64,000 nt of DNA from Macrostomum lignano (Eukaryota): NCBI GenBank assembly GCA_002269645.1, contig NIVC01000800.1, forward strand, positions 124,001-188,000. The letters run 5' to 3'. Below are positions 1 through 31,573 of the stretch, piece by piece. A program made the position numbers and the translations under genes. How positions within the stretch are numbered: the first letter of the stretch is position 1; each line of letters begins with the position of its first letter. The notes under the pieces are model-generated. The model saw only the letters and a list, made by a program, of their open reading frames with translations, had not been told where the DNA came from and did not search any database.

Positions 1-980
1 AACCTTCGAGGTCATTCTGTCTGGCAAGCTGCGAGCTACTCCGAGCGACTCTTCGAGGTCATTCTGTCTGGAAAGTAATAACATGCGAGGACATACTGGA
101 GTTTGAAAAAATTAATTTCTTAACTTTCAGCGTCTACTAAAGGAGCTTAGAATAAGTAAACAAGAGCGTTTGTCTTCTTTCTGCCCCTGCCTCTCGGTCT
201 GCCAGTCTGTCTTCTGTATGCTTCGCATTGGAAGGCTCAAGTCATAAAGTGAGGGAGGTCCAATGTCTTGAAGAATACAAAATCGATGCTTTGAGACAAG
301 AGACGGTGCGCGCACCAGTGGGCTGCACTGCAAGTCTGCAACAAATTGGCTCCTAGAAGCAACACACTATAGCTACGCCCCCCGCATATTTTTATTGCTT
401 CTTCCGTTCTTCATTCACTCCTGTGAATTCCGAAACTGCAAAATAAAGAGCTGAAGGCAGTCATTTTTTTAGATCTAAACAAATATACGAGTAACGTAAA
501 GTCTCGACAACAACAGTGCCGTTCGGTTTTGATGAAGCTAAAACAACAAAGTCTATTTTTTATTTAAATTCGTCAACGTATTTTGTTTTACTAATGTTTC
601 TATCTGAAAGGAGCATATCGCACACTGTAACACAAAGTTTCATAGAATATTCCAAATTCCAAGGACAAAGTTGCTGACAGTTTAAGTGCTACTTCTAAGC
701 ATTTAGTGAGTAAAAATGAAAACTGTGTTCAAAACTCACGCTAACTAATAAACTAATAAATAAACGAAGTTTCATTTTCTAAACGAATATTGTCCAGACC
801 TACATATATATAAGCTATGCTTCACTCTAACAGTAGCAAACTAAACTGAACAGGGGTTAGTAGGAACAACGGGACTCGCACACGCGCACAAATGTGCAAT
901 GAAAGTGCAACTTACAGTACGCGGCTATCAGTTCGCTAGTGAACTTTATCGAACAATCAGTTAATCAAACTCGATGGGGT

Positions 981-1902
981 TCAATAAGCCCGAATCTTCG
1001 GCGGCACTGTCGGGCAGTCCTTCTGGTCGAGGGTCTTGTCAATGACCGGCCGGTACTTGAGCGTCACCTTGCCGGTGGCCTCGTCCATGAAGCACAGCGT
1101 GTGCTTGCGCCAGTGCTGCTCGAACGGCCGCTTGGTCTGGCCATCGGTCGGCTTGGTGTAGTCGAACTCGTCGATTCGATCTTTGAAGTCTTCGCGGGCG
1201 TGGGCGCCGCGCGACTCATTGCGGGCCTCGGCAGCGTACACAGTCTGCGTTGAGATGGCGGGAGCGGCTGGGTTTCACGGTTGAGATTAGATTTAATTGC
1301 GGGGGGGGGGCAGGTAAGATTAGAGATAAAAGGTGCGATGATATTTAGGGGTGACATAAGAGTCGAAAGATGAAACCTGGATGCGAAGTCTGAGAAGAGA
1401 TTCTAAGGGAAGGAGAAGGGCTTACCTGTCCAGCATTGAGCATCAGATTCTGCAGCTCCAGCGTCTCAACCAGATCGGAGTTCCAAATCAGGCTGCGGTC
1501 GGTGACCTTCAGATCGGCCATCCGTTTGTAGATCGCGTCGAACTCCTGGCAGCCGCGCTTCAGGGTGGGGCCGTCGCGGAACACGGCGGCGTTGCTCTGC
1601 ATGGCCTTCTGCAGGTCCAGCCGCAGCTGCGCCGTTGGGGTGTCGCCTTTGGCGTTGCGCAGCCGGTCGATGTTGGCTACGGAGGCCTCACCGGAGTCGG
1701 AGCGGAGGGGCGCCTGCTTCTCCCCAGGCCGGTTCTCCTTGGCGATGGTGTGCGCGCAGGCGCGGCCGAACACGACCAGATCCAGCAGAGAGTTGGCGCC
1801 GAGGCGGTTGGCGCCGTGCACCGACACGCAGGCGGCCTCGCCAGCGGCGTACAGGCCGGGGATCACCACGTCGGAGCCTTTCTGGGCATCGTAGGTGATG
1901 GC
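981..1902 (-). pseudogene. SDHA: Second orphan duplicate of SDHA exons 3-4 (exon 3 1426-1902, exon 4 981-1244)
   Basis: Same as above, offset 7474-7475 bp. Confidence 0.9.
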
Positions 1903-1919
1903 CTGCGGGAGGGGGACAG

Positions 1920-2232
1920 GAGACTGGCTATGAATCTAATGAGACTGGCTATCAATCTAATGAGACTGGCTATCAATCTAATGAGACTGGCTATCAATCT
2001 CATGAGACTGGCTATCAATCTCATGAGACTGGCTATCAATCTAATGAGACTGGCTATCAATCTAATGAGACTGGCTATCAATTTAATGAGACTGGCTATC
2101 AATCTAATGAGACTGGCTATCAATCTAATGAGACTGGCTATCAATCTAATATCTAATGAGACTGGCTATCAATCTAATGAGACTGGCTATCAATCTAATA
2201 TCTAATGAGACTGGTTATCAATCTAATGAGAC
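1920..2232. repeat. 21-bp minisatellite (GAGACTGGCTATCAATCTAAT), truncated copy, about 14 units
   Basis: Direct reading; same motif as SDHA intron 2. Confidence 0.97.
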
Positions 2233-4908
2233 AAGTTTGACTGTTTCAGAGAAGAACAAGAAGAGGATGATTGTAGGCGGCTCCGAGAGCTCCCTACCGC
2301 CTCAGTTTAGAAGTGAGTATCAGCGCCATGACTCACAATGGCGACATTTCTGACACACTTTAGCATGCAATTCATCAACAAGTTTGACTGTTTCAGAGAA
2401 GAACAAGAAGAGGATGATTGTAGGCGGCTCCGAGAGCTCCCTGCCGCCTCAGTTTAGAAGTGAGTATCAGCGCCATGACTCACAATGGCGACATTTCTGA
2501 CACAATAGCATGCAATTCATCAACAAGTTTGACTGTTTCAGAGAAGAACAAGAAGAGGATGATTGTAGGCGGCTCCGAGAGCTCCCTGCCGCCTCAGTTT
2601 AGAAGTGAGTATCAGCGCCATGACTCACAATGGCGACATTTCTGACACACTAGCATGCAATTCATCAACAAGTTTGACTGTTTCAGAGAAGAACAAGAAG
2701 AGGATGATTGTAGGCGGCTCCGAGAGCTCCCTGCCGCCTCAGTTTAGAAGTGAGTATCAGCGCCATGACTCACAATGGCGACATTTCTGACACACTAGCA
2801 TGCAATTCATCAACAAGTTTGACTGTTTCAGAGAAGAACAAGAAGAGGATGATTGTAGGCGGCTCCGAGAGCTCCCTGCCGCCTCAGTTTAGAAGTGAGT
2901 ATCAGCGCCATGACTCACAATGGCGACATTTCTGACACACTAGCATGCAATTCATCAACAAGTTTGACTGTTTCAGAGAAGAACAAGAAGAGGATGATTG
3001 TAGGCGGCTCCGAGAGCTCCCTGCCACCTCAGTTTAGAAGTGAGTATCAGCGCCATGACTCACAATGGCGACATTTCTGACACACTAGCATGCAATTCAT
3101 CAACAAGTTTGACTGTTTCAGAGAAGAACAAGAAGAGGATGATTGTAGGCGGCTCCGAGAGCTCCCTGCCGCCTCAGTTTAGAAGTGAGTATCAGCGCCA
3201 TGACTCACAATGGCGACATTTCTGACACACTAGCATGCAATTCATCAACAAGTTTGACTGTTTCAGAGAAGAACAAGAAGAGGATGATTGTAGGCGGCTC
3301 CGAGAGCTCCCTGCCACCTCAGTTTAGAAGTGAGTATCAGCGCCATGACTCACAATGGCGACATTTCTGACACACTAGCATGCAATTCATCAACAAGTTT
3401 GACTGTTTCAGAGAAGAACAAGAAGAGGATGATTGTAGGCGGCTCCGAGAGCTCCCTGCCGCCTCAGTTTAGAAGTGAGTATCAGCGCCATGACTCACAA
3501 TGGCGACATTTCTGACACACTTTAGCATGCAATTCATCAACAAGTTTGACTGTTTCAGAGAAGAACAAGAAGAGGATGATTGTAGGCGGCTCCGAGAGCT
3601 CCCTGCCGCCTCAGTTTAGAAGTGAGTATCAGCGCCATGACTCACAATGGCGACATTTCTGACACAATAGCATGCAATTCATCAACAAGTTTGACTGTTT
3701 CAGAGAAGAACAAGAAGAGGATGATTGTAGGCGGCTCCGAGAGCTCCCTGCCGCCTCAGTTTAGAAGTGAGTATCAGCGCCATGACTCACAATGGCGACA
3801 TTTCTGACACACTAGCATGCAATTCATCAACAAGTTTGACTGTTTCAGAGAAGAACAAGAAGAGGATGATTGTAGGCGGCTCCGAGAGCTCCCTGCCGCC
3901 TCAGTTTAGAAGTGAGTATCAGCGCCATGACTCACAATGGCGACATTTCTGACACACTTTAGCATGCAATTCATCAACAAGTTTGACTGTTTCAGAGAAG
4001 AACAAGAAGAGGATGATTGTAGGCGGCTCCGAGAGCTCCCTGCCGCCTCAGTTTAGAAGTGAGTATCAGCGCCATGACTCACAATGGCGACATTTCTGAC
4101 ACAATAGCATGCAATTCATCAACAAGTTTGACTGTTTCAGAGAAGAACAAGAAGAGGATGATTGTAGGCGGCTCCGAGAGCTCCCTGCCGCCTCAGTTTA
4201 GAAGTGAGTATCAGCGCCATGACTCACAATGGCGACATTTCTGACACACTAGCATGCAATTCATCAACAAGTTTGACTGTTTCAGAGAAGAACAAGAAGA
4301 GGATGATTGTAGGCGGCTCCGAGAGCTCCCTGCCGCCTCAGTTTAGAAGTGAGTATCAGCGCCATGACTCACAATGGCGACATTTCTGACACACTAGCAT
4401 GCAATTCATCAACAAGTTTGACTGTTTCAGAGAAGAACAAGAAGAGGATGATTGTAGGCGGCTCCGAGAGCTCCCTACCGCCTCAGTTTAGAAGTGAGTA
4501 TCAGCGCCATGACTCACAATGGCGACATTTCTGACACACTTTAGCATGCAATTCATCAACAAGTTTGACTGTTTCAGAGAAGAACAAGAAGAGGATGATT
4601 GTAGGCGGCTCCGAGAGCTCCCTACCGCCTCAGTTTAGAAGTGAGTATCAGCGCCATGACTCACAATGGCGACATTTCTGACACACTTTAGCATGCAATT
4701 CATCAACAAGTTTGACTGTTTCAGAGAAGAACAAGAAGAGGATGATTGTAGGCGGCTCCGAGAGCTCCCTGCCGCCTCAGTTTAGAAGTGAGTATCAGCG
4801 CCATGACTCACAATGGCGACATTTCTGACACACTAGCATGCAATTCATCAACAAGTTTGACTGTTTCAGAGAAGAACAAGAAGAGGATGATTGTAGGCGG
4901 CTCCGAGA
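2232..4908 (+). repeat. 145/147-bp tandem array; each unit = 63-nt exon + 82/84-nt GT-AG intron (18 internal exons, first at 2250-2312)
   Basis: Every unit has tttgactgtttcAG|, a 63-nt segment, |GTGAGT and an intronic CTGAC branch-like motif. Only one frame is open (KKNKKRMIVGGSESSLPPQFR). Confidence 0.8.
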
Positions 4909-5051
4909 GAAACGAATCTAATAAGAAGAAAAAAGTTCAAGTACACAAGGCCGGCGGAAATGGCGAGAAAAAGTCCGGCGGGAGAGCTGCCAAAAAGCAG
5001 CATCTGAAGGGACCCAGCAAAGGAAAGCCGCAGGGCAAGCATCAGCCTTAA
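4870..5051 (+). CDS. Terminal coding exon of unidentified plus-strand gene (Lys/Gly-rich basic C-terminus), in frame with the repeat exons
   Basis: After the last AG: KNKKRMIVGGSERNESNKKKK...KGKPQGKHQP-TAA, then G|GTAGGT donor (5053) and ttttctttcAG acceptor (5236), i.e. a likely 3'UTR intron. Confidence 0.65.
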
Positions 5052-6369
5052 GGTAGGTAGGCCCTATGGAATTACATTTATGGGTGAGTGTTGAAAATAT
5101 TTTGAATCTGATTGCAAAGCGAAACTACTAACTGATGAAGTGCCCGGAGAGACAGGTCATAACAAGTGACTAGTTTATTTATTAGCATTTTAGAAATACT
5201 TCGTGCATGCTGACCCTTTCTACTCTTTTCTTTCAGGTGCCGACGGTTAAAGTCAGAATTTAATTCTGCGAGGCTGATGATACGAAACATGACCAGACAA
5301 ACTATGACAATTATTTTCCTTGATTCGGTAAAAGTGAACAAACGTTTCTTTTTTCTCCCCGATAATTCGCATCCAGTCGCTTTTTGGAAGCGCGCAGCCT
5401 TCAACGTAACTATTATGCGATGGAGGAAGGAAATAAATTAAGCCAGAACTCAATAACGAACCCTTTCGATTCCTAAAGTGTGGCAGTGGTTATTCAAGCA
5501 AATTTCCAAGAAAATATTAATTGTTTGTGCTATTTTATTTCAGGAAACGAAACTAATCGGATTTCTTAATTTACAATTTCCAACTCTTGACAAAGCTTTA
5601 CGCCAAGAGTACATGTATTTCTGAAGGGCTTTTCATGTATATCAGTACTCTGTGTATGTTCTGTTTCAGATTTAGCGATTTCTGCATTAATGAGATGAAG
5701 GATTTTAATGAATTGTTGTTAGTTTGGCTAGCCTTTAACCTGCCTAGCTGTCTGAGGAACCTGTCACAAGCGTACCGATCGAGGCTATGCGTGTGCTGTT
5801 TGTTGTTGTTAAACGGGGTGCTAGCGGGATCAGCCCAAGTGACGTTGGCTCCACCGCTTGAACAGACAACCTCAAGATTGAATCCCTTCAGTGGGGATCG
5901 GAGCCGTTGAAAGATTTGGAAACTCCTGCAGGATTTGTTGTCCTCACTGCAAAGGCTCATAATTACGAATATTTTCACGGCTTGGCTCCGCTAATCCAAG
6001 CTCAGTGGACCCGCAATCTCGGCCAGACACAAGTGAAATTTAACTATCCATCAGGCAGGGTCGAACGTGAGCGGACGACACAAAGAGCGAGATCAATGGC
6101 GCCATCCGCGGGCACTTGGTCCAGCTCCCGCAAACAGGTGCATGAGAGCCTTGCCTACACATGTGCTTTACGGCAATATATCACATGTACGAGTATTTAC
6201 ATGCATATTATTACATGCAAGGGCAACTATGAGGATATAGTTAACCCACAGACTGCAGCCTGAATTGCCGCACTCATCTCGCAAAAGTACACGGGGTGTC
6301 TGGAGTTCTGACACTTAAACCCAGAGATAAAAAGGGAGATTTGGTGTCATTTTGAAGCGGCGCATTCTT

Positions 6370-6725
6370 TATTATTATTAGAGGCAGGGGGGTTGTGTGC
6401 ACCCTGGCGCACTTTAAGCGACATAGGCACACAACCGGCGAGAGGCATTACTGCCCATTCCGCCGACTCCCCTGAGCAGGCACACAAGCGCGCGGATACG
6501 TACGCAGGCACACACTCACACAGGAGTGTACAGCGGCCCTAACTTTATTTTTATCGTTAGGCATGTACACTTCACTGCGCCTTGGGGGCTCTCAAGGCCG
6601 TTAATTGCACGAGCAGAGCCAAGCCGAGATTCTAATTCAGACCCAAATTAATGCGACTGCACTTGGAATCGAGCCTGGGTCGCTGGCACACCAGAGCCTG
6701 CGCTACCGCTGGGCTACGGCCCCCC
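6370..6725 (-). mobile_element. tRNA-derived SINE (family A), full length, 13-bp TSD
   Basis: Minus-strand head GGGGCCGTAGCCCAGCGG (A box) ...GGCTCGATTCC (B box); (AAT)n tail; GCGGCGCATTCTT at 6357-6369 and 6726-6738. Confidence 0.85.
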
Positions 6726-6849
6726 GCGGCGCATTCTTCCTAGTATATTAAATCTCGCATATTTTGGTCATTTCATTTAAAATTTGCTTTATAAAGCATC
6801 GCAATGTCACTGATAGTCTAGCGAAATTGACAACCTACATAGAAAGTGA

Positions 6850-7300
6850 TGGTTTGCCCCTCATGGATAAACCTTCTTAACATAGTCGTCACATGTAGCA
6901 ACTCGCTTCTTCCACCGCTTGAGCATGGATGGCGTCAGTCGCATCGAAATAGCTTTGGCTTGAAAGACCTTGGGAAAGAATTCATCGGACCTTGTCTTAA
7001 AACGGCTCTTCAGCTGCAGAAAAATAAAGAAATCGGCAGGCTCCAGATCCGTTGAGTGTAGATTTTGAAAATCATCTACTAATTTGCTTTTTGGTTTGAT
7101 AGCGGCCTACGTTGGTTCACAGACAGTTTCGATCTAGTGCAGTAAATCATGCCGTTTACCTGATGGGCAAGTTCACGTTCATCTCGTAGTCGTATTACAT
7201 CAAGGTGCAAAATGCGCTGCACAATGACGCATCCATCGGAAACGACACTAGACACATTGGAAATGAAGTTTGTAAGTTGTTTTTTTTAAGCAAACCCCTC
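6850..7300 (-). mobile_element. Degenerate Tc1/mariner transposase C-terminal relic
   Basis: Minus-strand translation HSTDLEPADFFIFLQLK...MLKRWKKRVATCDDYVKK resembles mariner YSPDLAPxDFFLFxxLK...KRWxKCxxxxGDYxEK. Upstream part is disrupted, no TIRs seen. Confidence 0.5.
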
Positions 7301-8454
7301 ACCGTTTTTGAGCACAATTCTTCGCAAAGCAACCGTTTAAGCTATTTCCGGCTCAGCTGGACCAAGAGTGGCAATTCTATTCTCCCATAACTCCTTTTTT
7401 CCCAGCCTTCTCCGACTGTAGCTTAGCCAGGGATAGCATTCAATTGCCAGCCAGCAGACCATGCAAAACAATGAAACCTTCGAGGTCATTCTGTCTGGCA
7501 AGCTGCGAGCTACTCCGAGCGACTCTTCGAGGTCATTCTGTCTGGAAAGTAATAACATGCGAGGACATACTGGAGTTTGAAAAAATTAATTTCTTAACTT
7601 TCAGCGTCTACTAAAGGAGCTTAGAATAAGTAAACAAGAGCGTTTGTCTTCTTTCTGCCCCTGCCTCTCGGTCTGCCAGTCTGTCTTCTGTATGCTTCGC
7701 ATTGGAAGGCTCAAGTCATAAAGTGAGGGAGGTCCAATGTCTTGAAGAATACAAAATCGATGCTTTGAGACAAGAGACGGTGCGCGCACCAGTGGGCTGC
7801 ACTGCAAGTCTGCAACAAATTGGCTCCTAGAAGCAACACACTATAGCTACGCCCCCCGCATATTTTTATTGCTTCTTCCGTTCTTCATTCACTCCTGTGA
7901 ATTCCGAAACTGCAAAATAAAGAGCTGAAGGCAGTCATTTTTTTAGATCTAAACAAATATACGAGTAACGTAAAGTCTCGACAACAACAGTGCCGTTCGG
8001 TTTTGATGAAGCTAAAACAACAAAGTCTATTTTTTATTTAAATTCGTCAACGTATTTTGTTTTACTAATGTTTCTATCTGAAAGGAGCATATCGCACACT
8101 GTAACACAAAGTTTCATAGAATATTCCAAATTCCAAGGACAAAGTTGCTGACAGTTTAAGTGCTACTTCTAAGCATTTAGTGAGTAAAAATGAAAACTGT
8201 GTTCAAAACTCACGCTAACTAATAAACTAATAAATAAACGAAGTTTCATTTTCTAAACGAATATTGTCCAGACCTACATATATATAAGCTATGCTTCACT
8301 CTAACAGTAGCAAACTAAACTGAACAGGGGTTAGTAGGAACAACGGGACTCGCACACGCGCACAAATGTGCAATGAAAGTGCAACTTACAGTACGCGGCT
8401 ATCAGTTCGCTAGTGAACTTTATCGAACAATCAGTTAATCAAACTCGATGGGGT

Positions 8455-9377
8455 TCAATAAGCCCGAATCTTCGGCGGCACTGTCGGGCAGTCCTTCTGG
8501 TCGAGGGTCTTGTCAATGACCGGCCGGTACTTGAGCGTCACCTTGCCGGTGGCCTCGTCCATGAAGCACAGCGTGTGCTTGCGCCAGTGCTGCTCGAACG
8601 GCCGCTTGGTCTGGCCATCGGTCGGCTTGGTGTAGTCGAACTCGTCGATTCGATCTTTGAAGTCTTCGCGGGCGTGGGCGCCGCGCGACTCATTGCGGGC
8701 CTCGGCAGCGTACACAGTCTGCGTTGAGATGGCGGGAGCGGCTGGGTTTCACGGTTGAGATTAGATTTAATTGCGGGGGGGGGGGCAGGTAAGATTAGAG
8801 ATAAAAGGTGCGATGATATTTAGGGGTGACATAAGAGTCGAAAGATGAAACCTGGATGCGAAGTCTGAGAAGAGATTCTAAGGGAAGGAGAAGGGCTTAC
8901 CTGTCCAGCATTGAGCATCAGATTCTGCAGCTCCAGCGTCTCAACCAGATCGGAGTTCCAAATCAGGCTGCGGTCGGTGACCTTCAGATCGGCCATCCGT
9001 TTGTAGATCGCGTCGAACTCCTGGCAGCCGCGCTTCAGGGTGGGGCCGTCGCGGAACACGGCGGCGTTGCTCTGCATGGCCTTCTGCAGGTCCAGCCGCA
9101 GCTGCGCCGTTGGGGTGTCGCCTTTGGCGTTGCGCAGCCGGTCGATGTTGGCTACGGAGGCCTCACCGGAGTCGGAGCGGAGGGGCGCCTGCTTCTCCCC
9201 AGGCCGGTTCTCCTTGGCGATGGTGTGCGCGCAGGCGCGGCCGAACACGACCAGATCCAGCAGAGAGTTGGCGCCGAGGCGGTTGGCGCCGTGCACCGAC
9301 ACGCAGGCGGCCTCGCCAGCGGCGTACAGGCCGGGGATCACCACGTCGGAGCCTTTCTGGGCATCGTAGGTGATGGC
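8455..9377 (-). pseudogene. SDHA: Orphan duplicate of SDHA exons 3-4 (exon 3 8901-9377, exon 4 8455-8718); exons 1-2 absent
   Basis: Same translation and splice sites as 15204-16125. Upstream sequence switches from the 21-bp intron minisatellite to the 145-bp array instead of exon 2. Confidence 0.9.
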
Positions 9378-9394
9378 CTGCGGGAGGGGGACAG

Positions 9395-9707
9395 GAGACT
9401 GGCTATGAATCTAATGAGACTGGCTATCAATCTAATGAGACTGGCTATCAATCTAATGAGACTGGCTATCAATCTCATGAGACTGGCTATCAATCTCATG
9501 AGACTGGCTATCAATCTAATGAGACTGGCTATCAATCTAATGAGACTGGCTATCAATTTAATGAGACTGGCTATCAATCTAATGAGACTGGCTATCAATC
9601 TAATGAGACTGGCTATCAATCTAATATCTAATGAGACTGGCTATCAATCTAATGAGACTGGCTATCAATCTAATATCTAATGAGACTGGTTATCAATCTA
9701 ATGAGAC
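9395..9707. repeat. 21-bp minisatellite, truncated copy
   Basis: Identical to 1920-2232. Confidence 0.97.
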
Positions 9708-11656
9708 AAGTTTGACTGTTTCAGAGAAGAACAAGAAGAGGATGATTGTAGGCGGCTCCGAGAGCTCCCTACCGCCTCAGTTTAGAAGTGAGTATCAGCG
9801 CCATGACTCACAATGGCGACATTTCTGACACACTAGCATGCAATTCATCAACAAGTTTGACTGTTTCAGAGAAGAACAAGAAGAGGATGATTGTAGGCGG
9901 CTCCGAGAGCTCCCTGCCGCCTCAGTTTAGAAGTGAGTATCAGCGCCATGACTCACAATGGCGACATTTCTGACACAATAGCATGCAATTCATCAACAAG
10001 TTTGACTGTTTCAGAGAAGAACAAGAAGAGGATGATTGTAGGCGGCTCCGAGAGCTCCCTGCCGCCTCAGTTTAGAAGTGAGTATCAGCGCCATGACTCA
10101 CAATGGCGACATTTCTGACACACTAGCATGCAATTCATCAACAAGTTTGACTGTTTCAGAGAAGAACAAGAAGAGGATGATTGTAGGCGGCTCCGAGAGC
10201 TCCCTGCCGCCTCAGTTTAGAAGTGAGTATCAGCGCCATGACTCACAATGGCGACATTTCTGACACACTAGCATGCAATTCATCAACAAGTTTGACTGTT
10301 TCAGAGAAGAACAAGAAGAGGATGATTGTAGGCGGCTCCGAGAGCTCCCTGCCACCTCAGTTTAGAAGTGAGTATCAGCGCCATGACTCACAATGGCGAC
10401 ATTTCTGACACACTAGCATGCAATTCATCAACAAGTTTGACTGTTTCAGAGAAGAACAAGAAGAGGATGATTGTAGGCGGCTCCGAGAGCTCCCTACCGC
10501 CTCAGTTTAGAAGTGAGTATCAGCGCCATGACTCACAATGGCGACATTTCTGACACACTTTAGCATGCAATTCATCAACAAGTTTGACTGTTTCAGAGAA
10601 GAACAAGAAGAGGATGATTGTAGGCGGCTCCGAGAGCTCCCTGCCGCCTCAGTTTAGAAGTGAGTATCAGCGCCATGACTCACAATGGCGACATTTCTGA
10701 CACAATAGCATGCAATTCATCAACAAGTTTGACTGTTTCAGAGAAGAACAAGAAGAGGATGATTGTAGGCGGCTCCGAGAGCTCCCTGCCGCCTCAGTTT
10801 AGAAGTGAGTATCAGCGCCATGACTCACAATGGCGACATTTCTGACACACTAGCATGCAATTCATCAACAAGTTTGACTGTTTCAGAGAAGAACAAGAAG
10901 AGGATGATTGTAGGCGGCTCCGAGAGCTCCCTGCCGCCTCAGTTTAGAAGTGAGTATCAGCGCCATGACTCACAATGGCGACATTTCTGACACACTTTAG
11001 CATGCAATTCATCAACAAGTTTGACTGTTTCAGAGAAGAACAAGAAGAGGATGATTGTAGGCGGCTCCGAGAGCTCCCTGCCGCCTCAGTTTAGAAGTGA
11101 GTATCAGCGCCATGACTCACAATGGCGACATTTCTGACACAATAGCATGCAATTCATCAACAAGTTTGACTGTTTCAGAGAAGAACAAGAAGAGGATGAT
11201 TGTAGGCGGCTCCGAGAGCTCCCTGCCGCCTCAGTTTAGAAGTGAGTATCAGCGCCATGACTCACAATGGCGACATTTCTGACACACTTTAGCATGCAAT
11301 TCATCAACAAGTTTGACTGTTTCAGAGAAGAACAAGAAGAGGATGATTGTAGGCGGCTCCGAGAGCTCCCTACCGCCTCAGTTTAGAAGTGAGTATCAGC
11401 GCCATGACTCACAATGGCGACATTTCTGACACACTTTAGCATGCAATTCATCAACAAGTTTGACTGTTTCAGAGAAGAACAAGAAGAGGATGATTGTAGG
11501 CGGCTCCGAGAGCTCCCTGCCGCCTCAGTTTAGAAGTGAGTATCAGCGCCATGACTCACAATGGCGACATTTCTGACACACTAGCATGCAATTCATCAAC
11601 AAGTTTGACTGTTTCAGAGAAGAACAAGAAGAGGATGATTGTAGGCGGCTCCGAGA
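9707..11656 (+). repeat. Second 145/147-bp exon-intron array (13 internal exons, first at 9725-9787)
   Basis: Same unit as 2232-4908, different copy number and variant order. Confidence 0.8.
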
Positions 11657-11799
11657 GAAACGAATCTAATAAGAAGAAAAAAGTTCAAGTACACAAGGCC
11701 GGCGGAAATGGCGAGAAAAAGTCCGGCGGGAGAGCTGCCAAAAAGCAGCATCTGAAGGGACCCAGCAAAGGAAAGCCGCAGGGCAAGCATCAGCCTTAA
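11618..11799 (+). CDS. Second copy of the basic terminal exon
   Basis: Identical to 4870-5051. Confidence 0.65.
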
Positions 11800-13118
11800 G
11801 GTAGGTAGGCCCTATGGAATTACATTTATGGGTGAGTGTTGAAAATATTTTGAATCTGATTGCAAAGCGAAACTACTAACTGATGAAGTGCCCGGAGAGA
11901 CAGGTCATAACAAGTGACTAGTTTATTTATTAGCATTTTAGAAATACTTCGTGCATGCTGACCCTTTCTACTCTTTTCTTTCAGGTGCCGACGGTTAAAG
12001 TCAGAATTTAATTCTGCGAGGCTGATGATACGAAACATGACCAGACAAACTATGACAATTATTTTCCTTGATTCGGTAAAAGTGAACAAACGTTTCTTTT
12101 TTCTCCCCGATAATTCGCATCCAGTCGCTTTTTGGAAGCGCGCAGCCTTCAACGTAACTATTATGCGATGGAGGAAGGAAATAAATTAAGCCAGAACTCA
12201 ATAACGAACCCTTTCGATTCCTAAAGTGTGGCAGTGGTTATTCAAGCAAATTTCCAAGAAATTATTAATTGTTTGTGCTATTTTATTTCAGGAAACGAAA
12301 CTAATCGGATTTCTTAATTTACAATTTCCAACTCTTGACAAAGCTTTACGCCAAGAGTACATGTATTTTTGAAGGGCTTTTCATGTACATCAGCACTCTG
12401 TGTATGTTCTGTTTCAGATTTAGCGATTACCGCATTAATGAGATGAAAGATTTCAATGAATTGTTGTTAGTTTGGCTAGCCTTTAACCTGCCTAGCTGTC
12501 TGAGGAACCTGTCACAAGCGTACCGATCGAGGCTATGCGTGTGCTGTTTGTTGTTGTTAAACGGGGTGCTAGCGGGGATCAGCCCAAGTGACGTTGGCTC
12601 CACCGCTTGAACAGACAACCTCAAGATTGAATCCCTTCAGTGGGGATCGGAGCCGTTGAAAGATTTGGAAACTCCTGCAGGATTTGTTGTCCTCACTGCA
12701 AAGGCTCATAATTACGAATATTTTCACGGCTTGGCTCCGCTAATCCAAGCTCAGTGGACCCGCAATCTCGGCCAGACACAAGTGAAATTTAACTATCCAT
12801 CAGGCAGGGTCGAACGTGAGCGGACGACACAAAGAGCGAGATCAATGGCGCCATCCGCGGGCACTTGGTCCAGCTCCCGCAAACAGGTGCATGAGAGCCT
12901 TGCCTACACATGTGCTTTACGGCAATATATCACATGTACGAGTATTTACATGCATATTATTACATGCAAGGGCAACTATGAGGATATAGTTAACCCACAG
13001 ACTGCAGCCTGAATTGCCGCACTCATCTCGCAAAAGTACACGGGGTGTCTGGAGTTCTGACACTTAAACCCAGAGATAAAAAGGGAGATTTGGTGTCATT
13101 TTGAAGCGGCGCATTCTT

Positions 13119-13474
13119 TATTATTATTAGAGGCAGGGGGTTGTGTGCACCCTGGCGCACTTTAAGCGACATAGGCACACAACCGGCGAGAGGCATTACT
13201 GCCCATTCCGCCGACTCCCCTGAGCAGGCACACAAGCGCGCGGATACGTACGCAGGCACACACTCACACAGGAGTGTACAGCGGCCCTAACTTTATTTTT
13301 ATCGTTAGGCATGTACACTTCACTGCGCCTTGGGGGGCTCTCAAGGCCGTTAATTGCACGAGCAGAGCCAAGCCGAGATTCTAATTCAGACCCAAATTAA
13401 TGCGACTGCACTTGGAATCGAGCCTGGGTCGCTGGCACACCAGAGCCTGCGCTACCGCTGGGCTACGGCCCCCC
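13119..13474 (-). mobile_element. SINE family A, duplicated copy
   Basis: Same sequence and TSD (13106-13118, 13475-13487) as 6370-6725. Confidence 0.85.
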
Positions 13475-13598
13475 GCGGCGCATTCTTCCTAGTATATTAA
13501 ATCTCGCATATTTTGGTCATTTCATTTAAAATTTGCTTTATAAAGCATCGCAATGTCACTGATAGTCTAGCGAAATTGACAACCTACATAGAAAGTGA

Positions 13599-14049
13599 TG
13601 GTTTGCCCCTCATGGATAAACCTTCTTAACATAGTCGTCACATGTAGCAACTCGCTTCTTCCACCGCTTGAGCATGGATGGCGTCAGTCGCATCGAAATA
13701 GCTTTGGCTTGAAAGACCTTGGGAAAGAATTCATCGGACCTTGTCTTAAAACGGCTCTTCAGCTGCAGAAAAATAAAGAAATCGGCAGGCTCCAGATCCG
13801 TTGAGTGTAGATTTTGAAAATCATCTACTAATTTGCTTTTTGGTTTGATAGCGGCCTACGTTGGTTCACAGACAGTTTCGATCTAGTGCAGTAAATCATG
13901 CCGTTTACCTGATGGGCAAGTTCACGTTCATCTCGTAGTCGTATTACATCAAGGTGCAAAATGCGCTGCACAATGACGCATCCATCGGAAACGACACTAG
14001 ACACATTGGAAATGAAGTTTGTAAGTTGTTTTTTTTAAGCAAACCCCTC
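13599..14049 (-). mobile_element. Mariner relic, duplicated copy
   Basis: Duplicate of 6850-7300. Confidence 0.5.
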
Positions 14050-15203
14050 ACCGTTTTTGAGCACAATTCTTCGCAAAGCAACCGTTTAAGCTATTTCCGG
14101 CTCAGCTGGACCAAGAGTGGCAATTCTATTCTCCCATAACTCCTTTTTTCCCAGCCTTCTCCGACTGTAGCTTAGCCAGGGATAGCATTCAATTGCCAGC
14201 CAGCAGACCATGCAAAACAATGAAACCTTCGAGGTCATTCTGTCTGGCAAGCTGCGAGCTACTCCGAGCGACTCTTCGAGGTCATTCTGTCTGGAAAGTA
14301 ATAACATGCGAGGACATACTGGAGTTTGAAAAAATTAATTTCTTAACTTTCAGCGTCTACTAAAGGAGCTTAGAATAAGTAAACAAGAGCGTTTGTCTTC
14401 TTTCTGCCCCTGCCTCTCGGTCTGCCAGTCTGTCTTCTGTATGCTTCGCATTGGAAGGCTCAAGTCATAAAGTGAGGGAGGTCCAATGTCTTGAAGAATA
14501 CAAAATCGATGCTTTGAGACAAGAGACGGTGCGCGCACCAGTGGGCTGCACTGCAAGTCTGCAACAAATTGGCTCCTAGAAGCAACACACTATAGCTACG
14601 CCCCCCGCATATTTTTATTGCTTCTTCCGTTCTTCATTCACTCCTGTGAATTCCGAAACTGCAAAATAAAGAGCTGAAGGCAGTTTTTTTTTTAGATCTA
14701 AACAAATATACGAGTAACGTAAAGTCTCGACAACAACAGTGCCGTTCGGTTTTGATGAAGCTAAAACAACAAAGTCTATTTTTTATTTAAATTCGTCAAC
14801 GTATTTTGTTTTACTAATGTTTCTATCTGAAAGGAGCATATCGCACACTGTAACACAAAGTTTCATAGAATATTCCAAATTCCAAGGACAAAGTTGCTGA
14901 CAGTTTAAGTGCTACTTCTAAGCATTTAGTGAGTAAAAATGAAAACTGTGTTCAAAACTCACGCTAACTAATAAACTAATAAATAAACGAAGTTTCATTT
15001 TCTAAACGAATATTGTCCAGACCTACATATATATAAGCTATGCTTCACTCTAACAGTAGCAAACTAAACTGAACAGGGGTTAGTAGGAACAACGGGACTC
15101 GCACACGCGCACAAATGTGCAATGAAAGTGCAACTTACAGTACGCGGCTATCAGTTCGCTAGTGAACTTTATCGAACAATCAGTTAATCAAACTCGATGG
15201 GGT

Positions 15204-15467
15204 TCAATAAGCCCGAATCTTCGGCGGCACTGTCGGGCAGTCCTTCTGGTCGAGGGTCTTGTCAATGACCGGCCGGTACTTGAGCGTCACCTTGCCGGTG
15301 GCCTCGTCCATGAAGCACAGCGTGTGCTTGCGCCAGTGCTGCTCGAACGGCCGCTTGGTCTGGCCATCGGTCGGCTTGGTGTAGTCGAACTCGTCGATTC
15401 GATCTTTGAAGTCTTCGCGGGCGTGGGCGCCGCGCGACTCATTGCGGGCCTCGGCAGCGTACACAGT
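15204..15467 (-). CDS. SDHA: SDHA exon 4 (terminal)
   Basis: caacgcag|ACT-GTG start; [16 protein letters not shown] motif and C-terminal ...[11 protein letters not shown]. Spliced CDS is 1935 nt = 644 aa + stop. Confidence 0.96.
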
Positions 15468-15648
15468 CTGCGTTGAGATGGCGGGAGCGGCTGGGTTTCA
15501 CGGTTGAGATTAGATTTAATTGCGGGGGGGGGGCAGGTAAGATTAGAGATAAAAGGTGCGATGATATTTAGGGGTGACATAAGAGTCGAAAGATGAAACC
15601 TGGATGCGAAGTCTGAGAAGAGATTCTAAGGGAAGGAGAAGGGCTTAC

Positions 15649-16125
15649 CTGTCCAGCATTGAGCATCAGATTCTGCAGCTCCAGCGTCTCAACCAGATCG
15701 GAGTTCCAAATCAGGCTGCGGTCGGTGACCTTCAGATCGGCCATCCGTTTGTAGATCGCGTCGAACTCCTGGCAGCCGCGCTTCAGGGTGGGGCCGTCGC
15801 GGAACACGGCGGCGTTGCTCTGCATGGCCTTCTGCAGGTCCAGCCGCAGCTGCGCCGTTGGGGTGTCGCCTTTGGCGTTGCGCAGCCGGTCGATGTTGGC
15901 TACGGAGGCCTCACCGGAGTCGGAGCGGAGGGGCGCCTGCTTCTCCCCAGGCCGGTTCTCCTTGGCGATGGTGTGCGCGCAGGCGCGGCCGAACACGACC
16001 AGATCCAGCAGAGAGTTGGCGCCGAGGCGGTTGGCGCCGTGCACCGACACGCAGGCGGCCTCGCCAGCGGCGTACAGGCCGGGGATCACCACGTCGGAGC
16101 CTTTCTGGGCATCGTAGGTGATGGC
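15649..16125 (-). CDS. SDHA: SDHA exon 3
   Basis: cccgcag|GCC-ATC start; GLYAAGEAACVSVHGANRLGANSLLDLVVFGR motif; 477 nt, ends CAG|GTAAGC. Confidence 0.96.
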
Positions 16126-16142
16126 CTGCGGGAGGGGGACAG

Positions 16143-17330
16143 GAGACTGGCTATGAATCTAATGAGACTGGCTATCAATCTAATGAGACTGGCTATCAAT
16201 CTAATGAGACTGGCTATCAATCTCATGAGACTGGCTATCAATCTCATGAGACTGGCTATCAATCTAATGAGACTGGCTATCAATCTAATGAGACTAGTTA
16301 TCAATCTAATGAGACTGGCTATGAATCTAATGAGACTGGCTATGAATCTAATGAGACTGGCTATGAATCTAATGAGACTGGCTATCAATCTAATGAGACT
16401 GGCTATCAATCTAATGAGACTGGCTTTCAATCTAATGAGACTGGCTATCAATCTAATGAGACTGGCTATCAATCTAATGAGACTGGCTATCAATCTAATG
16501 AGACTGGCTATCAATCTAATGAGACTGGCTATCAATCTAATGAGACTGGCTATCAATCTAATGAGACTGGCTATCAATCTAATGAGACTGGCTATGAATC
16601 TAATGAGACTGGCTATGAATCTAATGAGACTGGCTATCAATCTAATGAGACTGGCTATCAATCTAATGAGACTGGCTATCAATCTAATGAGACTAGTTAT
16701 CAATCTAATGAGACTGGCTATCAATCTAATGAGACTGGCTATCAATCTAATGAGACTAGTTATCAATCTAATGAGACTAGTTATCAATCTAATGAGACTG
16801 GCTATCAATCTAATGAGACTGGCTATGAATCTAATGAGACTAGTTATCAATCTAATGAGACTGGCTATGAATCTAATGAGACTGGCTATCAATCTAATGA
16901 GACTGGCTATCAATCTAATGAGACTGGCTATCAATCTAATGAGACTGGCTATCAATCTAATGAGACTGGCTATCAATCTAATGAGACTGGCTATCAATCT
17001 AATGAGACTGGCTATCAATCTAATGAGACTGGCTATCAATCTCATGAGACTGGCTATCAATCTAATGAGACTGGCTATCAATCTAATGAGACTGGCTATC
17101 AATCTAATGAGACTGGCTATCAATCTAATGAGACTGGCTATCAATCTAATGAGACTGGCTATCAATCTAATGAGACTGGCTATCAATCTAATGAGACTGG
17201 CTATGAATCTAATGAGACTGGCTATCAATCTAATGAGACTGGCTATCAATCTAATGAGACTGGCTATGAATCTAATGAGACTGGCTATCAATCTAATGAG
17301 ACTGGCTATCAATCTAATGAGACTGGCTAT
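16143..17330. repeat. 21-bp minisatellite, about 56 units, filling SDHA intron 2
   Basis: Direct reading; 1188 of the 1231 intron bases. Confidence 0.98.
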
Positions 17331-17356
17331 TCGAATAATCATGGGGCGCAACTCGC

Positions 17357-17846
17357 CTGGCCCTGCCAGTTGGTGGGCACGCCGCCCATGTTGTAGTGCA
17401 CAGTGGGCAGCACAGGGATCGGCTCCCGGGTCACGTCCACCCCGGCAAAGATGTGGGCGGTCTCGGAGATGCCCGGCAGGCGGCTGCGCAGCTGTTCAGG
17501 CGGCAGGTGGTGCAGCTGCAGGAAGATGTGGTCCTTGTCCTTGCCAACTCCGCGGCCCTCGCGAATCTCGATGGTCATGGCGCGAGACACCACGTCGCGG
17601 CTGGCCAGGTCCTTGGCAACAGGAGCGTAGCGCTCCATGAACCTTTCGCCCTCGCTATTAACCAAGTAGCCGCCTTCGCCGCGGCAGCCCTCGGTGATGA
17701 GGCAGCCTGCTCCATAGATGCCAGTAGGATGGAACTGGACAAATTCCAAGTCCTGGTTGGGCAGGCCAGCGCGGCTGACCATGGCAGTGCCATCGCCAGT
17801 GCAGGTGTGCGCTGAGGTGCACGAGAAGTAGCACCGACCATAGCCT
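17357..17846 (-). CDS. SDHA: SDHA exon 2
   Basis: ctgcag|A-GGC-TAT restores the frame ([20 protein letters not shown]...QFHPTG...[12 protein letters not shown]). 490 nt, ends CAG|GCGAGT (GC donor). Confidence 0.95.
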
Positions 17847-18977
17847 CTGCAGTTCAGGTGGAAAGTAAATGACTGCTTTGTCTTAGGAGTACAAGTTTTT
17901 ATTCCAACTGAACCTTATATTTAACCATTTCCTACTTATATATCTGATAGTAGTCTGAAGTGAGTATTAAGTCAGTTAAATTTAGCAGCTTCACCCTCCA
18001 TTGTTGGGAAGAAAAAAGCATGAAATTAAGTTTTAAAAGCAACCTATAGCTAGCTAATTCTTTGCTACAGGCACTTAGTGCACTAGATTGATGAGCCTTA
18101 GTGAACCAATCAATTTAATTTTTTATTAGATAAGATTGCCATCTATAAAAATACCCCTTGGCAATAAACTAAGTAATGAAATAATAAAAATCGAACAATT
18201 AGTAGCAAACCTAGTTTTAATGAGTCTATAGTAAAAAGTAAATAATATTTAAAAAAATAATATTGACTGATTTATTGAGATTTTAGTTATAAAAAGCATA
18301 AGCTATCAGAGTTACATTATATCAAATAGAAAATAAACTAAGGATTGACCAACTATGATTTTTTCATGCATGATTGGAACTAGACCATGTGTGAAACCAT
18401 GTGTGACTATGAATTTTTTACATTTTATTTGAACACAGAACTATGTATTAATATTATTGTCTAATAATTTTTTTTGATTTTTAAGATTTTATGATTATAA
18501 GTTATGAAAGATTGGGAAAGAATTCAATCAAAGCAATGTTTATATATGCAAGCAATAAAGTTCACAAGTTCATAGTTTATAAGTAAGAAGCTATTACATT
18601 TACATTATCCTTATTATAAATTAAAATTGATTAAAATCATTTGCTTATATAACTATTAATTATATACTTAATTATAAAGAATCTAGACCATATATTTCTA
18701 GTTTTAGTTAGTCTAGATTTGCTAATTATAAGAAAAATAAAATATTTAATACTCAATGTTACATATATGGTATATTAATATTTTTATAAATTATTGTAAA
18801 TATCCATTAATTAAACTTTTTAAATATTTAATAACTTTATATAGGCCTAATTTGGTTTCAAAGCTAAGAGAAGGCCAAAAAATATCGAAACTTTTACTGT
18901 GTATAAGCCAAAGGTAAAATTCCAAAGTCAAGTCAAACGTAATAAACAATAATGACTAGTATCAATTCAATACTCAC

Positions 18978-19681
18978 CCAGTAGCCAAAACAGTATTCTT
19001 TGATTGAAACCTATGAATTGTGCCATCTTCCAAATTCAAGGCAATGACACCTTTGCAGATTCCATCTTCATAGATAATGTCCAGAGCAAAATACTCAACA
19101 AAATAGTCGCAGCCATACTTCAATGACCTGCCATACAAGGTATGCAGCATTGAATGTCCAGTTCGATCTGCCACTGCACAGCAACGATGGGCCTGGCCTC
19201 CTTGGCCATAGTTGATGCTCTGACCACCAAAAGCACGCTGGTAAATCCGGCCATTTTCTAAACGACTAAATGGCATACCATAGTTTTCCAGCTCGATCAC
19301 AGCCTTGGGCGCCTGCTCGCACATGTAGTGAATAGCATCTTGGTCACCTAGCCAGTCAGAACCCTTCACCGTATCATACATGTGGAATCGCCAGTCATCA
19401 GCCTCCATGTTTCCCAGTGCGGCATTGATTCCACCCTGCGCTGCAACAGTATGGGATCGAGTAGGAAACAGCTTTGTTACGCATGCTGTCTTGAATCCTT
19501 CATTAGCGAGTCCGAAAGCAGCACGCAAACCAGCGCCACCAGCTCCAACGACTACAGCATCATAGACATGGTCAATGACAGGATATTGCGATGTTATTGA
19601 ACTGGTAGTTGCATTGCGATGCAAGCGCTGGTTAAAACCAACGATATTTCTCAGTCTTGAAATTCGCCCTAATTTTAACAT
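18978..19681 (-). CDS. SDHA: Succinate dehydrogenase flavoprotein subunit, exon 1 (transit peptide + FAD-binding N-terminus)
   Basis: ORF with GAGGAG dinucleotide-binding motif and [12 protein letters not shown] covalent-FAD His motif. Ends ...TVLAT-GG|GTGAGT (phase 2 donor at 18977). Confidence 0.97.
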
Positions 19682-31128: not shown

Positions 31129-31573
31129 CCGAAAGCTACAGCATGCAGCTGGAATGTGAAGCACTCACACTGTTGTTTATAGTATATAGCTCGTACTTTT
31201 AGTACTTTATATAGTAATTGTCAGATACATAATATTGATTAATATTGTTAATGCAAATAGCTGTGCGTATCCCTTTCTAGAAAGTTCAATAAATATTCAA
31301 TACAGTATCGTACCGATATATCTATGGTTGTTAGTTCATATCGCAAATACGCTAATACTTTAAGTGCCCCCCCCAAACTGCTCAATTTTTCATCTTGTGT
31401 ATTTCTTTTTGTTCAAACTGATAAAATATACTTAATTAAAAGAAGCAAACTTCAACAGGTTATGGGCCCAGCACGCTTCCACTGCGAGTACTTCGATGTA
31501 CTAGATCATTCTGGTAATCTGGTTGTTCGTGCCATCTGGAAACTTGATCGCTCGGTCGATCAGTTACGTTGCT

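What the first reader, a model, noticed from the sequence alone, without database searches (positions are those of the whole stretch)
2232..5236. The 145-bp 'satellite' is a tandem array of spliceable exon-intron cassettes encoding a 21-aa repeat
Seen in sequence: each unit parses as tttgactgtttcAG | 63-nt exon | GTGAGT + 82-nt intron with a CTGAC branch-like motif. The 63-nt exon is frame-preserving (phase 1-1) and only one of its three frames is open, giving KKNKKRMIVGGSESSLPPQFR per unit. Both exonic variants are synonymous third-position changes (CTG>CTA Leu, CCG>CCA Pro), while the +2-nt indel (TT) and the C>A change lie only in the intron. The last acceptor opens into a longer exon in the same frame that ends in TAA 1 nt before a donor. 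Inference: a 145-bp segment spanning exon end + intron + next exon start duplicated via the CCGAGAG junction, creating a hybrid micro-exon that now expands like a VNTR. Protein repeat number would then be set by satellite turnover and possibly exon skipping. Only two exonic variants exist, so the synonymy signal alone is weak.
Basis: partly seen in the sequence, partly recalled or inferred. Interest (0 to 1): 0.88.

Follow-up and report, generated by a model that had tools for sequence, protein, structure and literature searches.

The report
Minisatellite made of exon-intron cassettes
A 145-bp tandem repeat in the flatworm Macrostomum lignano is a string of identical small exons, each with its own intron, copied from a gene for a secreted, strongly positively charged protein; the two arrays in this window are duplicated gene tails that lack the front of the gene.

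Summary
Positions 2231-4909 hold 18 full units of 145 or 147 bp plus a 59-nt partial unit. Every unit reads CAG | 63-nt phase-1/1 exon | GTGAGT plus an 82 or 84-nt intron.

The window is M. lignano Mlig_3_7, NIVC01000800.1:124001-188000. Independent UniProt models from another assembly of this species carry a signal peptide, an acidic stretch and a basic stretch. They then contain ...RRIVLGGSESSLPPQFR|KKNKKRMIVGGSESSLPPQF, which is exactly the predicted exon-exon junction. Diverged paralogs conserve the motif, the tail and the last intron with its phase. The cassette reading is therefore well supported by sequence, but no RNA data could be reached.

Both arrays here have no 5' exons. They lie on a 6.7-7.5-kb tandem segmental duplication whose novel junction fuses a 21-bp minisatellite from an SDHA intron to the array. 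The flanks are 99.6-99.96% identical, yet the arrays differ by five units.

This is a young, small-scale example of exon-intron unit amplification. It is a new variant of a known kind and of moderate interest.

The parts
2231..4909 (+). Cassette array, copy 1. It has 18 full units (13 of 145 nt, 5 of 147 nt) plus a 59-nt partial unit ending at CCGAGAG.
2250..4787 (+). Span of the 18 micro-exons, each 63 nt. The first is 2250-2312 and the last is 4725-4787; the rest start at 2397, 2542, 2687, 2832, 2977, 3122, 3267, 3412, 3559, 3704, 3849, 3996, 4141, 4286, 4431 and 4578. Each is preceded by TTTGACTGTTTCAG and followed by GTGAGT and an intron of 82 or 84 nt. Each encodes (K)KNKKRMIVGGSESSLPPQFR in phase 1-1.
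   Evidence: one search gives the coordinates and shows all splice dinucleotides intact; searches give the frame.
4870..5052 (+). Terminal coding exon, KNKKRMIVGGSERNESNKKKKVQVHKAGGNGEKKSGGRAAKKQHLKGPSKGKPQGKHQP*. The TAA is at 5049-5051. The exon is homologous to the C-terminal part of paralog P0002 (KKKRIQKHKAGGSGVKKTGG...).
5053..5236 (+). Last intron, 184 nt, from GTAGGT to CTCTTTTCTTTCAG. Its position and phase are conserved with paralog P0002.
5237..5455 (+). Last exon. Here it reads G-ADG*SQNLILRG*, against SADCRSQNCILRG* in paralog P0002, so in this gene it is 3' UTR. AATAAA is at 5432-5437. The 3' end is estimated.
9706..11657 (+). Cassette array, copy 2. It has 13 full units plus a 59-nt partial. 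The micro-exons run from 9725-9787 to 11473-11535.
11618..12203 (+). Copy 2 of the terminal coding exon (11618-11800), the last intron (11801-11984) and the last exon (11985 to about 12203).
1920..2230 (.). 21-bp minisatellite (GAGACTGGCTATCAATCTAAT) derived from SDHA intron 2. The duplication junction with the 145-bp array is at 2230/2231, with AC microhomology. An identical copy lies at 9395-9705. The parental array lies at 16143-17330.
981..1902 (-). Duplicated SDHA exons 4 (981-1244) and 3 (1426-1902), detached from exons 1-2. A second duplicate lies at 8456-8719 and 8901-9377.
15204..19681 (-). Intact SDHA gene. Exons are 19681-18978, 17846-17357, 16125-15649 and 15467-15204. Intron 2 is essentially the 21-bp minisatellite and has a GC donor.
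   Evidence: the exon boundaries are confirmed by a related spliced transcript.
1..14224 (.). Two full units of a tandem segmental duplication, 1-7475 and 7476-14224. A third, partial unit from 14225 to about 16450 runs into the intact SDHA gene.

Best explanation
The 145-bp repeat is a recently amplified exon-intron cassette from a lineage-specific M. lignano gene. The gene encodes a secreted, highly cationic, probably disordered repeat protein.

Gene layout: a signal peptide, an acidic stretch and a basic stretch come first. They are followed by n copies of a 21-aa unit with net charge +5, and then by a Lys-rich tail.

Origin (inferred): unequal exchange between two homologous GGCGGCTCCGAGAG (GGSE) sites, one in the upstream exon (...IVLGGSE-SSLPPQFR) and one in the terminal exon (KKNKKRMIVGGSE-RNES...). 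This duplicated the segment 'exon tail + intron + next exon head' and created a hybrid 63-nt symmetric exon that carries the original acceptor and donor. Further unequal exchange then expanded and homogenised the array like a minisatellite.

Splicing (inferred): every unit keeps both splice sites, the exon length is a multiple of 3 and the intron is short. Nearest-neighbour splicing should therefore include all units and always stay in frame, so repeat number in the protein follows array length. Skipping any number of units would also stay in frame.

This window: both arrays (18 and 13 cassettes) are 5'-truncated gene tails. They sit on a 6.7-7.5-kb tandem segmental duplication whose single novel junction joins the 21-bp minisatellite of SDHA intron 2 to the array. 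An intact copy with the 5' exons is expected left of the window or at other loci. The copies seen here most likely do not make the secreted protein.

Shown: the anatomy, the frame, the junction peptide in independent models, the paralog conservation, the missing 5' exons and the copy-number difference. Inferred: actual splicing, the origin and the function.
For: - Array anatomy: all 31 cassettes are intact.
- Species and locus: the window is 100% identical to NIVC01000800.1 of GCA_002269645.1.
- Independent models: M. lignano models P0001, P0005 and P0006 contain ...KEKNQKNRRIVLGGSESSLPPQFRKKNKKRMIVGGSESSLPPQF(R) after a signal-peptide-like N-terminus. P0004 lacks exactly the 23-aa first unit and stays in frame.
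- Need for splicing: the junction peptide is absent from all six frames of the window, while PPQFRS occurs 31 times. The models therefore require removal of the 82-nt intron.
- Paralogs: P0002 and P0003 share IVGGSESSL[AP]PQFRKKN[KR]K and the ...HKAGG.G.KK.GG tail. The last 12 residues of P0002 map to window 5239-5274 across the intron 5053-5236 in the same phase.
- Splice signals: the unit donor GTGAGTAT is identical to the donor of SDHA intron 1.
- Missing 5' exons: residues 1-130 of P0001 have no match in the 64 kb. Both arrays abut the same 21-bp-array junction.
- Turnover: flanks are 99.96% and 99.57% identical, but the arrays have 18 and 13 units in a different variant order.
- Absence from the GenBank annotation: Wudarski et al. 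2017 (PMC5730564) removed transcripts that overlap repeat annotation, which explains why the gene is not annotated there.
Against: - No transcript data could be examined. The UniProt models come from the ML2 annotation, and I could not read its methods.
- All models stop after the second unit, so no model shows many units or joins the array to the tail.
- No DNA was available for the models or the paralogs, so the 5' end of the array and the proposed origin could not be checked at nucleotide level.
- Within the arrays the exon is no more conserved than the intron.
- Relative to paralog P0002, this gene has an earlier stop and a second in-frame stop in the last exon. That could be C-terminal variation or decay.
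- The protein has no Pfam domain and no relatives outside the species apart from a doubtful motif match.
Confidence: 0.7

Rival explanations
1. The arrays in this window are expressed and functional. Either their first acceptor (2249|2250 and 9724|9725) receives the spliced leader by trans-splicing from a read-through or precursor transcript, or they are cis-spliced to exons far upstream. Either route would give a repeat protein, which without the signal peptide would start at the in-frame Met of KKRMIVGG.
For: - 38.8% of M. lignano genes are SL trans-spliced, and about 7% of transcripts are multi-gene precursors (PMC5730564).
- All 31 cassettes, both terminal exons and the AATAAA signal are intact.
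- Each exon has an in-frame ATG.
Against: - No promoter or 5' exon lies within 64 kb.
- Immediately upstream are a minisatellite and antisense SDHA exon copies.
- The duplication is very young, at 99.6-99.96% identity, so intactness says nothing about selection.
- A product without a signal peptide would not be the secreted protein.
Confidence: 0.15
2. The repeat is an ordinary non-coding minisatellite. Its GT..AG parse and open frame are chance, and the database proteins are ab initio gene-finder artefacts made from the same sequence.
For: - The parse alone arises in 1-2% of control 145-mers, and this window holds dozens of minisatellites.
- The synonymy signal is weak.
- Exon and intron are equally variable.
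- The basis of the models is unverified.
Against: - The models join the unit in frame to a non-repetitive N-terminus with a signal-peptide-like start and untranslated-looking 5' extensions of different lengths. That pattern is typical of transcript-derived partial models.
- Diverged paralogs keep the same peptide across the same junction, the tail and the last intron's phase.
- The open frame of the micro-exon runs on into a 60-codon terminal exon that has a homolog.
Confidence: 0.1
3. The segmental duplication, the unit counts or both are assembly artefacts of the long-read Mlig_3_7 assembly, for example haplotype or homeolog copies laid end to end.
For: - The DV1 line carries duplicated chromosomes.
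- The assembly has 180-312 Mb of duplicated sequence, and only 64% of its bases are scored error-free by REAPR (PMC5730564).
- Three homeologous scaffolds exist for the right part of the window.
Against: - The 21-bp|145-bp junction cannot arise from stacking allelic copies and appears twice, identically.
- The two copies differ by private substitutions and by array structure, as real paralogous copies would.
- This rival does not affect the cassette reading itself.
Confidence: 0.1

Closest known systems
Amplified exon-intron units inside genes: tandem exon duplication and intron-bearing coding VNTRs. Examples from my own knowledge are human LPA kringle IV-2, the spider flagelliform silk gene, titin PEVK and nebulin exon blocks, and the 54-bp-exon model of collagen gene origin. 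A general treatment is PMC5100051.
   Same: - The genomic repeat unit contains a whole exon with its splice sites.
- The exon is symmetric, so copy number changes protein length in frame.
- Unequal exchange homogenises introns together with exons.
- Copies differ in unit number.
   Different: - The unit is only 145 bp (63-nt exon plus 82-nt intron) and 98-99% identical. That is minisatellite scale rather than kilobase scale, and it is evidently very young.
- The exon is a hybrid of two neighbouring exons.
- Transcript proof is lacking here.
Schistosome micro-exon genes (MEGs)
   Same: - Both are flatworm, lineage-specific genes for secreted proteins.
- Both have a signal peptide followed by short symmetric exons (3-81 bp in MEGs; bioRxiv 10.1101/2023.06.21.545858).
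- Exon skipping could give in-frame variants.
   Different: - MEG micro-exons are different from one another and separated by long introns (up to 5 kb). Here the exons are identical tandem copies with 82-nt introns.
- No sequence similarity to MEGs was found.
Lys/Arg-rich repetitive secreted proteins of M. lignano, namely the 'GRK' regions of the adhesive protein Mlig-ap1
   Same: - Both are secreted, strongly positively charged and repetitive.
- Both cannot be assembled from short reads (PMC8621496).
   Different: - No homology was detected.
- This protein is small and lacks the vWD, EGF and lectin domains.
- The tissue of expression is unknown.
Multi-copy peptide precursors (neuropeptide or antimicrobial polyproteins)
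   Same: A signal peptide is followed by many identical short peptides (MIVGGSESSLPPQF) flanked by polybasic sites (KKNKKR before, RKK after).
   Different: - There is no amidation Gly and no match to known peptide families.
- Such precursors usually have their copies in one exon.
- This is a resemblance only and was not tested.

Membership tests
Intron-bearing coding tandem repeat (exon-intron cassette array) | A head-to-tail genomic unit that contains a complete exon with acceptor and donor. | tested here: met
   31 of 31 units have CAG | 63 nt | GTGAGT.
Intron-bearing coding tandem repeat (exon-intron cassette array) | The exon length is a multiple of 3 with the same phase at both ends, and the frame is open. 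| tested here: met
   The exon is 63 nt, phase 1-1, with one open frame. In-silico splicing gives open frames of 438 and 333 codons.
Intron-bearing coding tandem repeat (exon-intron cassette array) | The array is embedded between unique exons of one gene in the same frame. | tested here: inconclusive
   The 3' side is met, because the terminal exon is in frame and has a homolog in a paralog. The 5' side is seen only in protein models from another assembly. It is absent from this window.
Intron-bearing coding tandem repeat (exon-intron cassette array) | Mature transcripts contain the repeated exons joined to each other. | not testable with these tools
   The only evidence is indirect: the junction peptide PPQFR|KKNKK in UniProt models, which the genome cannot encode contiguously.
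Intron-bearing coding tandem repeat (exon-intron cassette array) | Unit number varies between copies or alleles. | tested here: met
   The two arrays have 18 and 13 units between flanks that are 99.6-99.96% identical.
Schistosome-type micro-exon genes | Most of the coding sequence is built from short symmetric exons after a signal-peptide exon. | tested here: inconclusive
   The symmetric 63-nt exons are met. The signal peptide was judged by eye from P0006, and no predictor was run.
Schistosome-type micro-exon genes | The micro-exons are distinct and separated by long introns, and the protein is homologous to a MEG family. | tested here: not met
   The exons are identical and the introns are 82-84 nt. 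The only hits outside M. lignano are two doubtful motif matches to a dinoflagellate and a ciliate protein, neither a MEG.
Non-coding minisatellite | A tandem array without coding capacity or gene context. | tested here: not met
   The sequence is a tandem array, but it matches annotated proteins and paralogs in frame.
Multi-copy peptide precursor | Repeated peptide flanked by dibasic cleavage sites, plus evidence of processing or a known peptide family. | not tested
   Polybasic flanks are visible in the sequence. No family match was found. Processing cannot be tested here.

The most novel reading that the evidence does not exclude
In the intact copy of this gene, a 145-bp minisatellite whose unit is a complete exon plus intron is transcribed and spliced unit by unit. 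The length of a secreted polycationic protein (or the dose of a 14-aa peptide released at polybasic sites) would then be set directly by minisatellite turnover. In-frame skipping of cassettes could add a ladder of isoforms. This would be an unusually small and young intron-bearing coding VNTR, an origin of a repeat protein by exon-intron amplification caught in progress.
Probability: 0.45. Interest if true: 0.65.

Novelty: new variant of a known kind. Interest (0 to 1): 0.5.

Why it matters
Repeat proteins are thought to grow by amplifying exon-intron units, but in known cases the introns have long since diverged or the units are kilobases long. Here the process is seen at minisatellite scale, with exon and intron still 98-99% identical. 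The hybrid exon still shows which two parental exons it came from, and two sister arrays already differ by five units.

If splicing is confirmed, the locus offers three things:
- a natural test of how the spliceosome pairs dozens of identical short introns;
- an example of a protein whose length changes at satellite mutation rates;
- a warning that repeat-masking pipelines remove real genes, since this gene is absent from the GenBank annotation, whose pipeline dropped transcripts overlapping repeats.

Tandem and simple repeats make up 15% of the M. lignano genome, so more such genes may be hidden there.

Tried and rejected
- DNA for the UniProt models and paralogs: P0001, P0006 and P0002 are not on record. 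The 5' end of the array, the upstream exon and nucleotide-level divergence could therefore not be examined.
The unspliced ORFs across the junction and across the terminal exon are not on record. The Mago nashi look-up identified the scaffold but reaches only the right part of the window.
- SDHA C-terminal homology search: it found no M. lignano entry. The best hit is an 86% identical transcript from a related organism. That transcript was useful only to confirm the SDHA exon boundaries.
- The paper describing the ML2 annotation is not held. Other papers did not state how those models were made.
- Pfam on the reconstructed protein and on P0002 gave nothing above threshold. The UniProt names (KI67, BLVR, H15, SET-binding) are low-complexity artefacts.
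- tRNA scan and Rfam scan found nothing in the window. The tRNA-like look of 6640-6720 is unsupported.
- IVGG as a serine-protease activation site was considered and dropped, because there is no protease domain downstream.
- Exhaustive phmmer found the motif MVIGGDESSLPPEYR in tandem repeats of a Symbiodinium protein, and a similar motif in a Paramecium protein. I judge this probably chance or convergent. A single 15-aa match of about 32 bits is expected roughly a thousand times in that library, and repeats inflate the E-value.
Full report
**1. What is there**

TRF finds a 145-bp array at 2231-4909 with 18.4 copies and 98% matches. It also finds a second, unreported array of the same unit at 9706-11657 with 13.4 copies.

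Cutting at the unit start gives 18 full units plus a 59-nt partial in array 1, and 13 full units plus the same partial in array 2. Every one of the 31 full units reads ...TTTGACTGTTTCAG | 63 nt | GTGAGT..., followed by an intron of 82 or 84 nt.

Only one frame of the 63-nt segment is open. With one base from the previous unit it gives KKNKKRMIVGGSESSLPPQFR, in phase 1-1.

There are four variable sites:
- CTG/CTA and CCG/CCA lie in the exon. Both are synonymous only in the open frame.
- A +TT insertion and a C>A change lie in the intron.

The partial last unit ends at CCGAGAG and continues in frame into a 183-nt exon (4870-5052). That exon ends with TAA one base before a GTAGGT donor. A 184-nt intron follows, then an acceptor at 5236.

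**2. Is it more than chance?**

Taken alone, hardly. A parse with comparable splice signals, an exon length that is a multiple of 3 and an open frame turns up in 1.9% of shuffled units and 1.0% of random 145-mers from this window. The window holds dozens of minisatellites.

Two synonymous variants out of two have P of about 0.05 counting all substitutions, or 0.11 counting transitions only. Exon and intron carry the same density of variable sites. The case therefore rests on outside evidence.

**3. Outside evidence**

*Protein hits.* A search with three units plus the tail found only Macrostomum lignano proteins.

- Cluster 1 (A0A1I8IUW5, JLP8, JIW0, JK32) reads as follows. There is a 5' extension without a Met, then MLLKGRAAAVSSLLLLVLLLVGTRCQA, which looks like a signal peptide. 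An acidic stretch and a basic stretch follow, and then ...PPVRKE KNQKNRRIVLGGSESSLPPQFR KKNKKRMIVGGSESSLPPQF(R), where all the models stop.
- The peptide PPQFR-KKNKK is the predicted exon-exon junction. It is not encoded contiguously anywhere in the window, where unspliced DNA reads PPQFRSEYQRHDSQWRHF* 31 times.
- A0A1I8JK32 lacks exactly the 23-aa first unit and stays in frame.
- A0A1I8FPF1 diverges after ...DIQK into sequence that appears, by my manual back-translation, to be a shifted reading frame of the region downstream in P0001. This would fit a skipped asymmetric exon.

*Paralogs.* Two diverged paralogs (A0A1I8ITX3, A0A1I8FQA5; about 50% identity) keep IVGGSESSLAPQFRKKNRK and a tail ...KKKRIQKHKAGGSGVKKTGG that is like the window's terminal exon. 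The last 12 residues of A0A1I8ITX3 (ADCRSQNCILRG*) align to window 5239-5274 (ADG*SQNLILRG*). That is the exon beyond the 5053-5236 intron, in the same phase. The gene structure is therefore shared by paralogs. In the window's gene an earlier TAA shortens the C-terminus.

*Limits of this evidence.* I could not establish whether these models are transcript-based. The paper is not held. The ragged, Met-less 5' extensions suggest that they are.

*Absence from GenBank.* The gene is missing from the GenBank annotation of Mlig_3_7. This is expected, because that pipeline discarded transcripts overlapping repeat annotation (PMC5730564).

*Wider searches.* No Pfam domain was found. An exhaustive phmmer search found no relative outside the species, apart from a short-motif match to a Symbiodinium and a Paramecium protein. 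I regard that match as probably chance, inflated by repeats.

**4.

The window is NIVC01000800.1:124001-188000 of M. lignano assembly GCA_002269645.1, at 100% identity.

Its first 16 kb are a tandem segmental duplication with units 1-7475, 7476-14224 and a partial third unit from 14225. Each unit starts with the last two exons of SDHA on the minus strand, followed by a 21-bp minisatellite.

- In the third unit the minisatellite (16143-17330) is simply intron 2 of the intact SDHA gene. Its exons are 19681-18978, 17846-17357, 16125-15649 and 15467-15204. The boundaries are confirmed by a related spliced transcript, and intron 2 has a GC donor.
- In units 1 and 2 the minisatellite is cut short after 311 bp and joined, through an AC microhomology, to the start of a 145-bp unit. 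That is the single novel junction of the duplication.

The N-terminal 130 residues of the gene models have no match anywhere in the 64 kb. Both arrays are therefore gene tails without 5' exons. The inferred original order is: 5' exons, cassette array, terminal exons, about 3.4 kb of spacer, then the SDHA 3' end in convergent orientation. The intact copy should lie left of the window or at other loci, since several distinct 5' variants exist among the models.

The flanks of units 1 and 2 are 99.96% and 99.57% identical. The arrays nevertheless hold 18 and 13 cassettes in a different order of variant types. Array turnover therefore outpaces point mutation.

**5. Mechanism**

*Shown:*
- Each unit carries an intact acceptor, a symmetric open exon and an intact donor. 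The donor octamer equals that of SDHA intron 1.
- The 3' end of the array lies exactly at CCGAGAG.
- The upstream exon in the models ends ...IVLGGSE-SSLPPQFR, and the terminal exon begins KKNKKRMIVGGSE-RNES. The unit's exon is the head of the terminal exon fused to the tail of the upstream exon.

*Inferred:*
- Unequal exchange between the two GGSE-coding sites made the first extra cassette. These sites are themselves an older internal repeat, which is also visible in the paralog as GGSESS and GGDESS. Further unequal exchange or slippage then expanded and homogenised the array.
- With short introns, nearest-neighbour pairing of splice sites should include every cassette. Any skipping stays in frame.
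- The product would be a secreted, disordered polycation with net charge +5 per 21 residues. It resembles the Lys/Arg-rich regions of M. lignano adhesive proteins in character only (PMC8621496).
- Alternatively, the product could be a precursor that releases many copies of MIVGGSESSLPPQF at polybasic sites.

The copies in this window probably make no secreted protein. Spliced-leader trans-splicing onto the first acceptor is conceivable in this species but untested.

**6. Comparison and verdict**

This is the known process of exon-intron unit amplification, as in LPA KIV-2, flagelliform silk, titin PEVK and the collagen 54-bp model. Here it occurs at unusually small scale and young age. It shares symmetric micro-exons and a secreted product with schistosome micro-exon genes, but it fails their defining features of distinct exons, long introns and homology.

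I rate it a new variant of a known kind.
- The cassette nature, the origin and the VNTR behaviour fit the evidence.
- Splicing itself is unproven.
- The arrays here are truncated duplicates.

Interest is moderate (0.5). It would rise if long cDNA reads show multi-cassette transcripts.

Noticed in passing
window 1-16450: A tandem segmental duplication (7475-bp and 6749-bp units plus a partial third) copies SDHA exons 3-4 and the tail of the neighbouring gene. The single novel junction, 21-bp array | 145-bp array, lies at 2230/2231 and 9705/9706 and has 2-nt AC microhomology.
   Followed up: yes
window 15204-19681 (minus): SDHA intron 2 (17356-16126) has a GC donor (CAG|GCGAGT) and consists almost entirely of a 21-bp minisatellite with 56.6 copies. 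Exon 1 is 46% GC, whereas exons 2-4 are 62-66% GC, and intron 1 is very AT-rich.
   Followed up: partly
P0128 (in the same 90% cluster as Symbiodinium natans CAE7229251.1) and P0129 (Paramecium sonneborni CAD8062986.1): Tandem repeats in these proteins carry motifs very like the flatworm unit: MVIGGDESSLPPEYR and MVGGDQNSLPPQYR against MIVGGSESSLPPQFR. This is probably chance or convergence inflated by repeats, but it is an odd coincidence across three distant eukaryotes.
   Followed up: partly
window 31523-35537 (+): A Ty1/copia-type retrotransposon. One ORF holds gag, zinc knuckle, beta-barrel and integrase core. A second ORF holds SH3-like and RVT_2 domains. The frame breaks near 33300.
   Followed up: partly
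window 35980-37122 (+): A single-ORF rhodopsin-family GPCR of 380 aa (Pfam 7tm_1), directly followed by a 29-bp GC-rich minisatellite.
   Followed up: partly
window 56595-57053 (-), 59015-60292 (-), 50551-50994 (-): An intronless Mago nashi gene, a DUF3472 plus ricin-B lectin gene, and an F5/8 type C domain ORF. Mago nashi and its neighbour recur on two homeologous scaffolds, NIVC01000644.1 and NIVC01000645.1.
   Followed up: partly
window 22651-63288: Minisatellite density is extreme, with more than 25 arrays of 12-60-bp units. They include a 5.2-kb CT-rich array (42018-47269) and a degenerate TTAGGG-like array (29324-29687). Many of them create long spurious ORFs.
   Followed up: no
window 2156-2353 (+): An ATG-started ORF begins inside the 21-bp array and reads in frame through the 'intron' end into the first micro-exon (MRLAINL...TSLTVSEKNKKRMIVGG...). 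It is probably incidental. No gene with this product is on record.
   Followed up: partly
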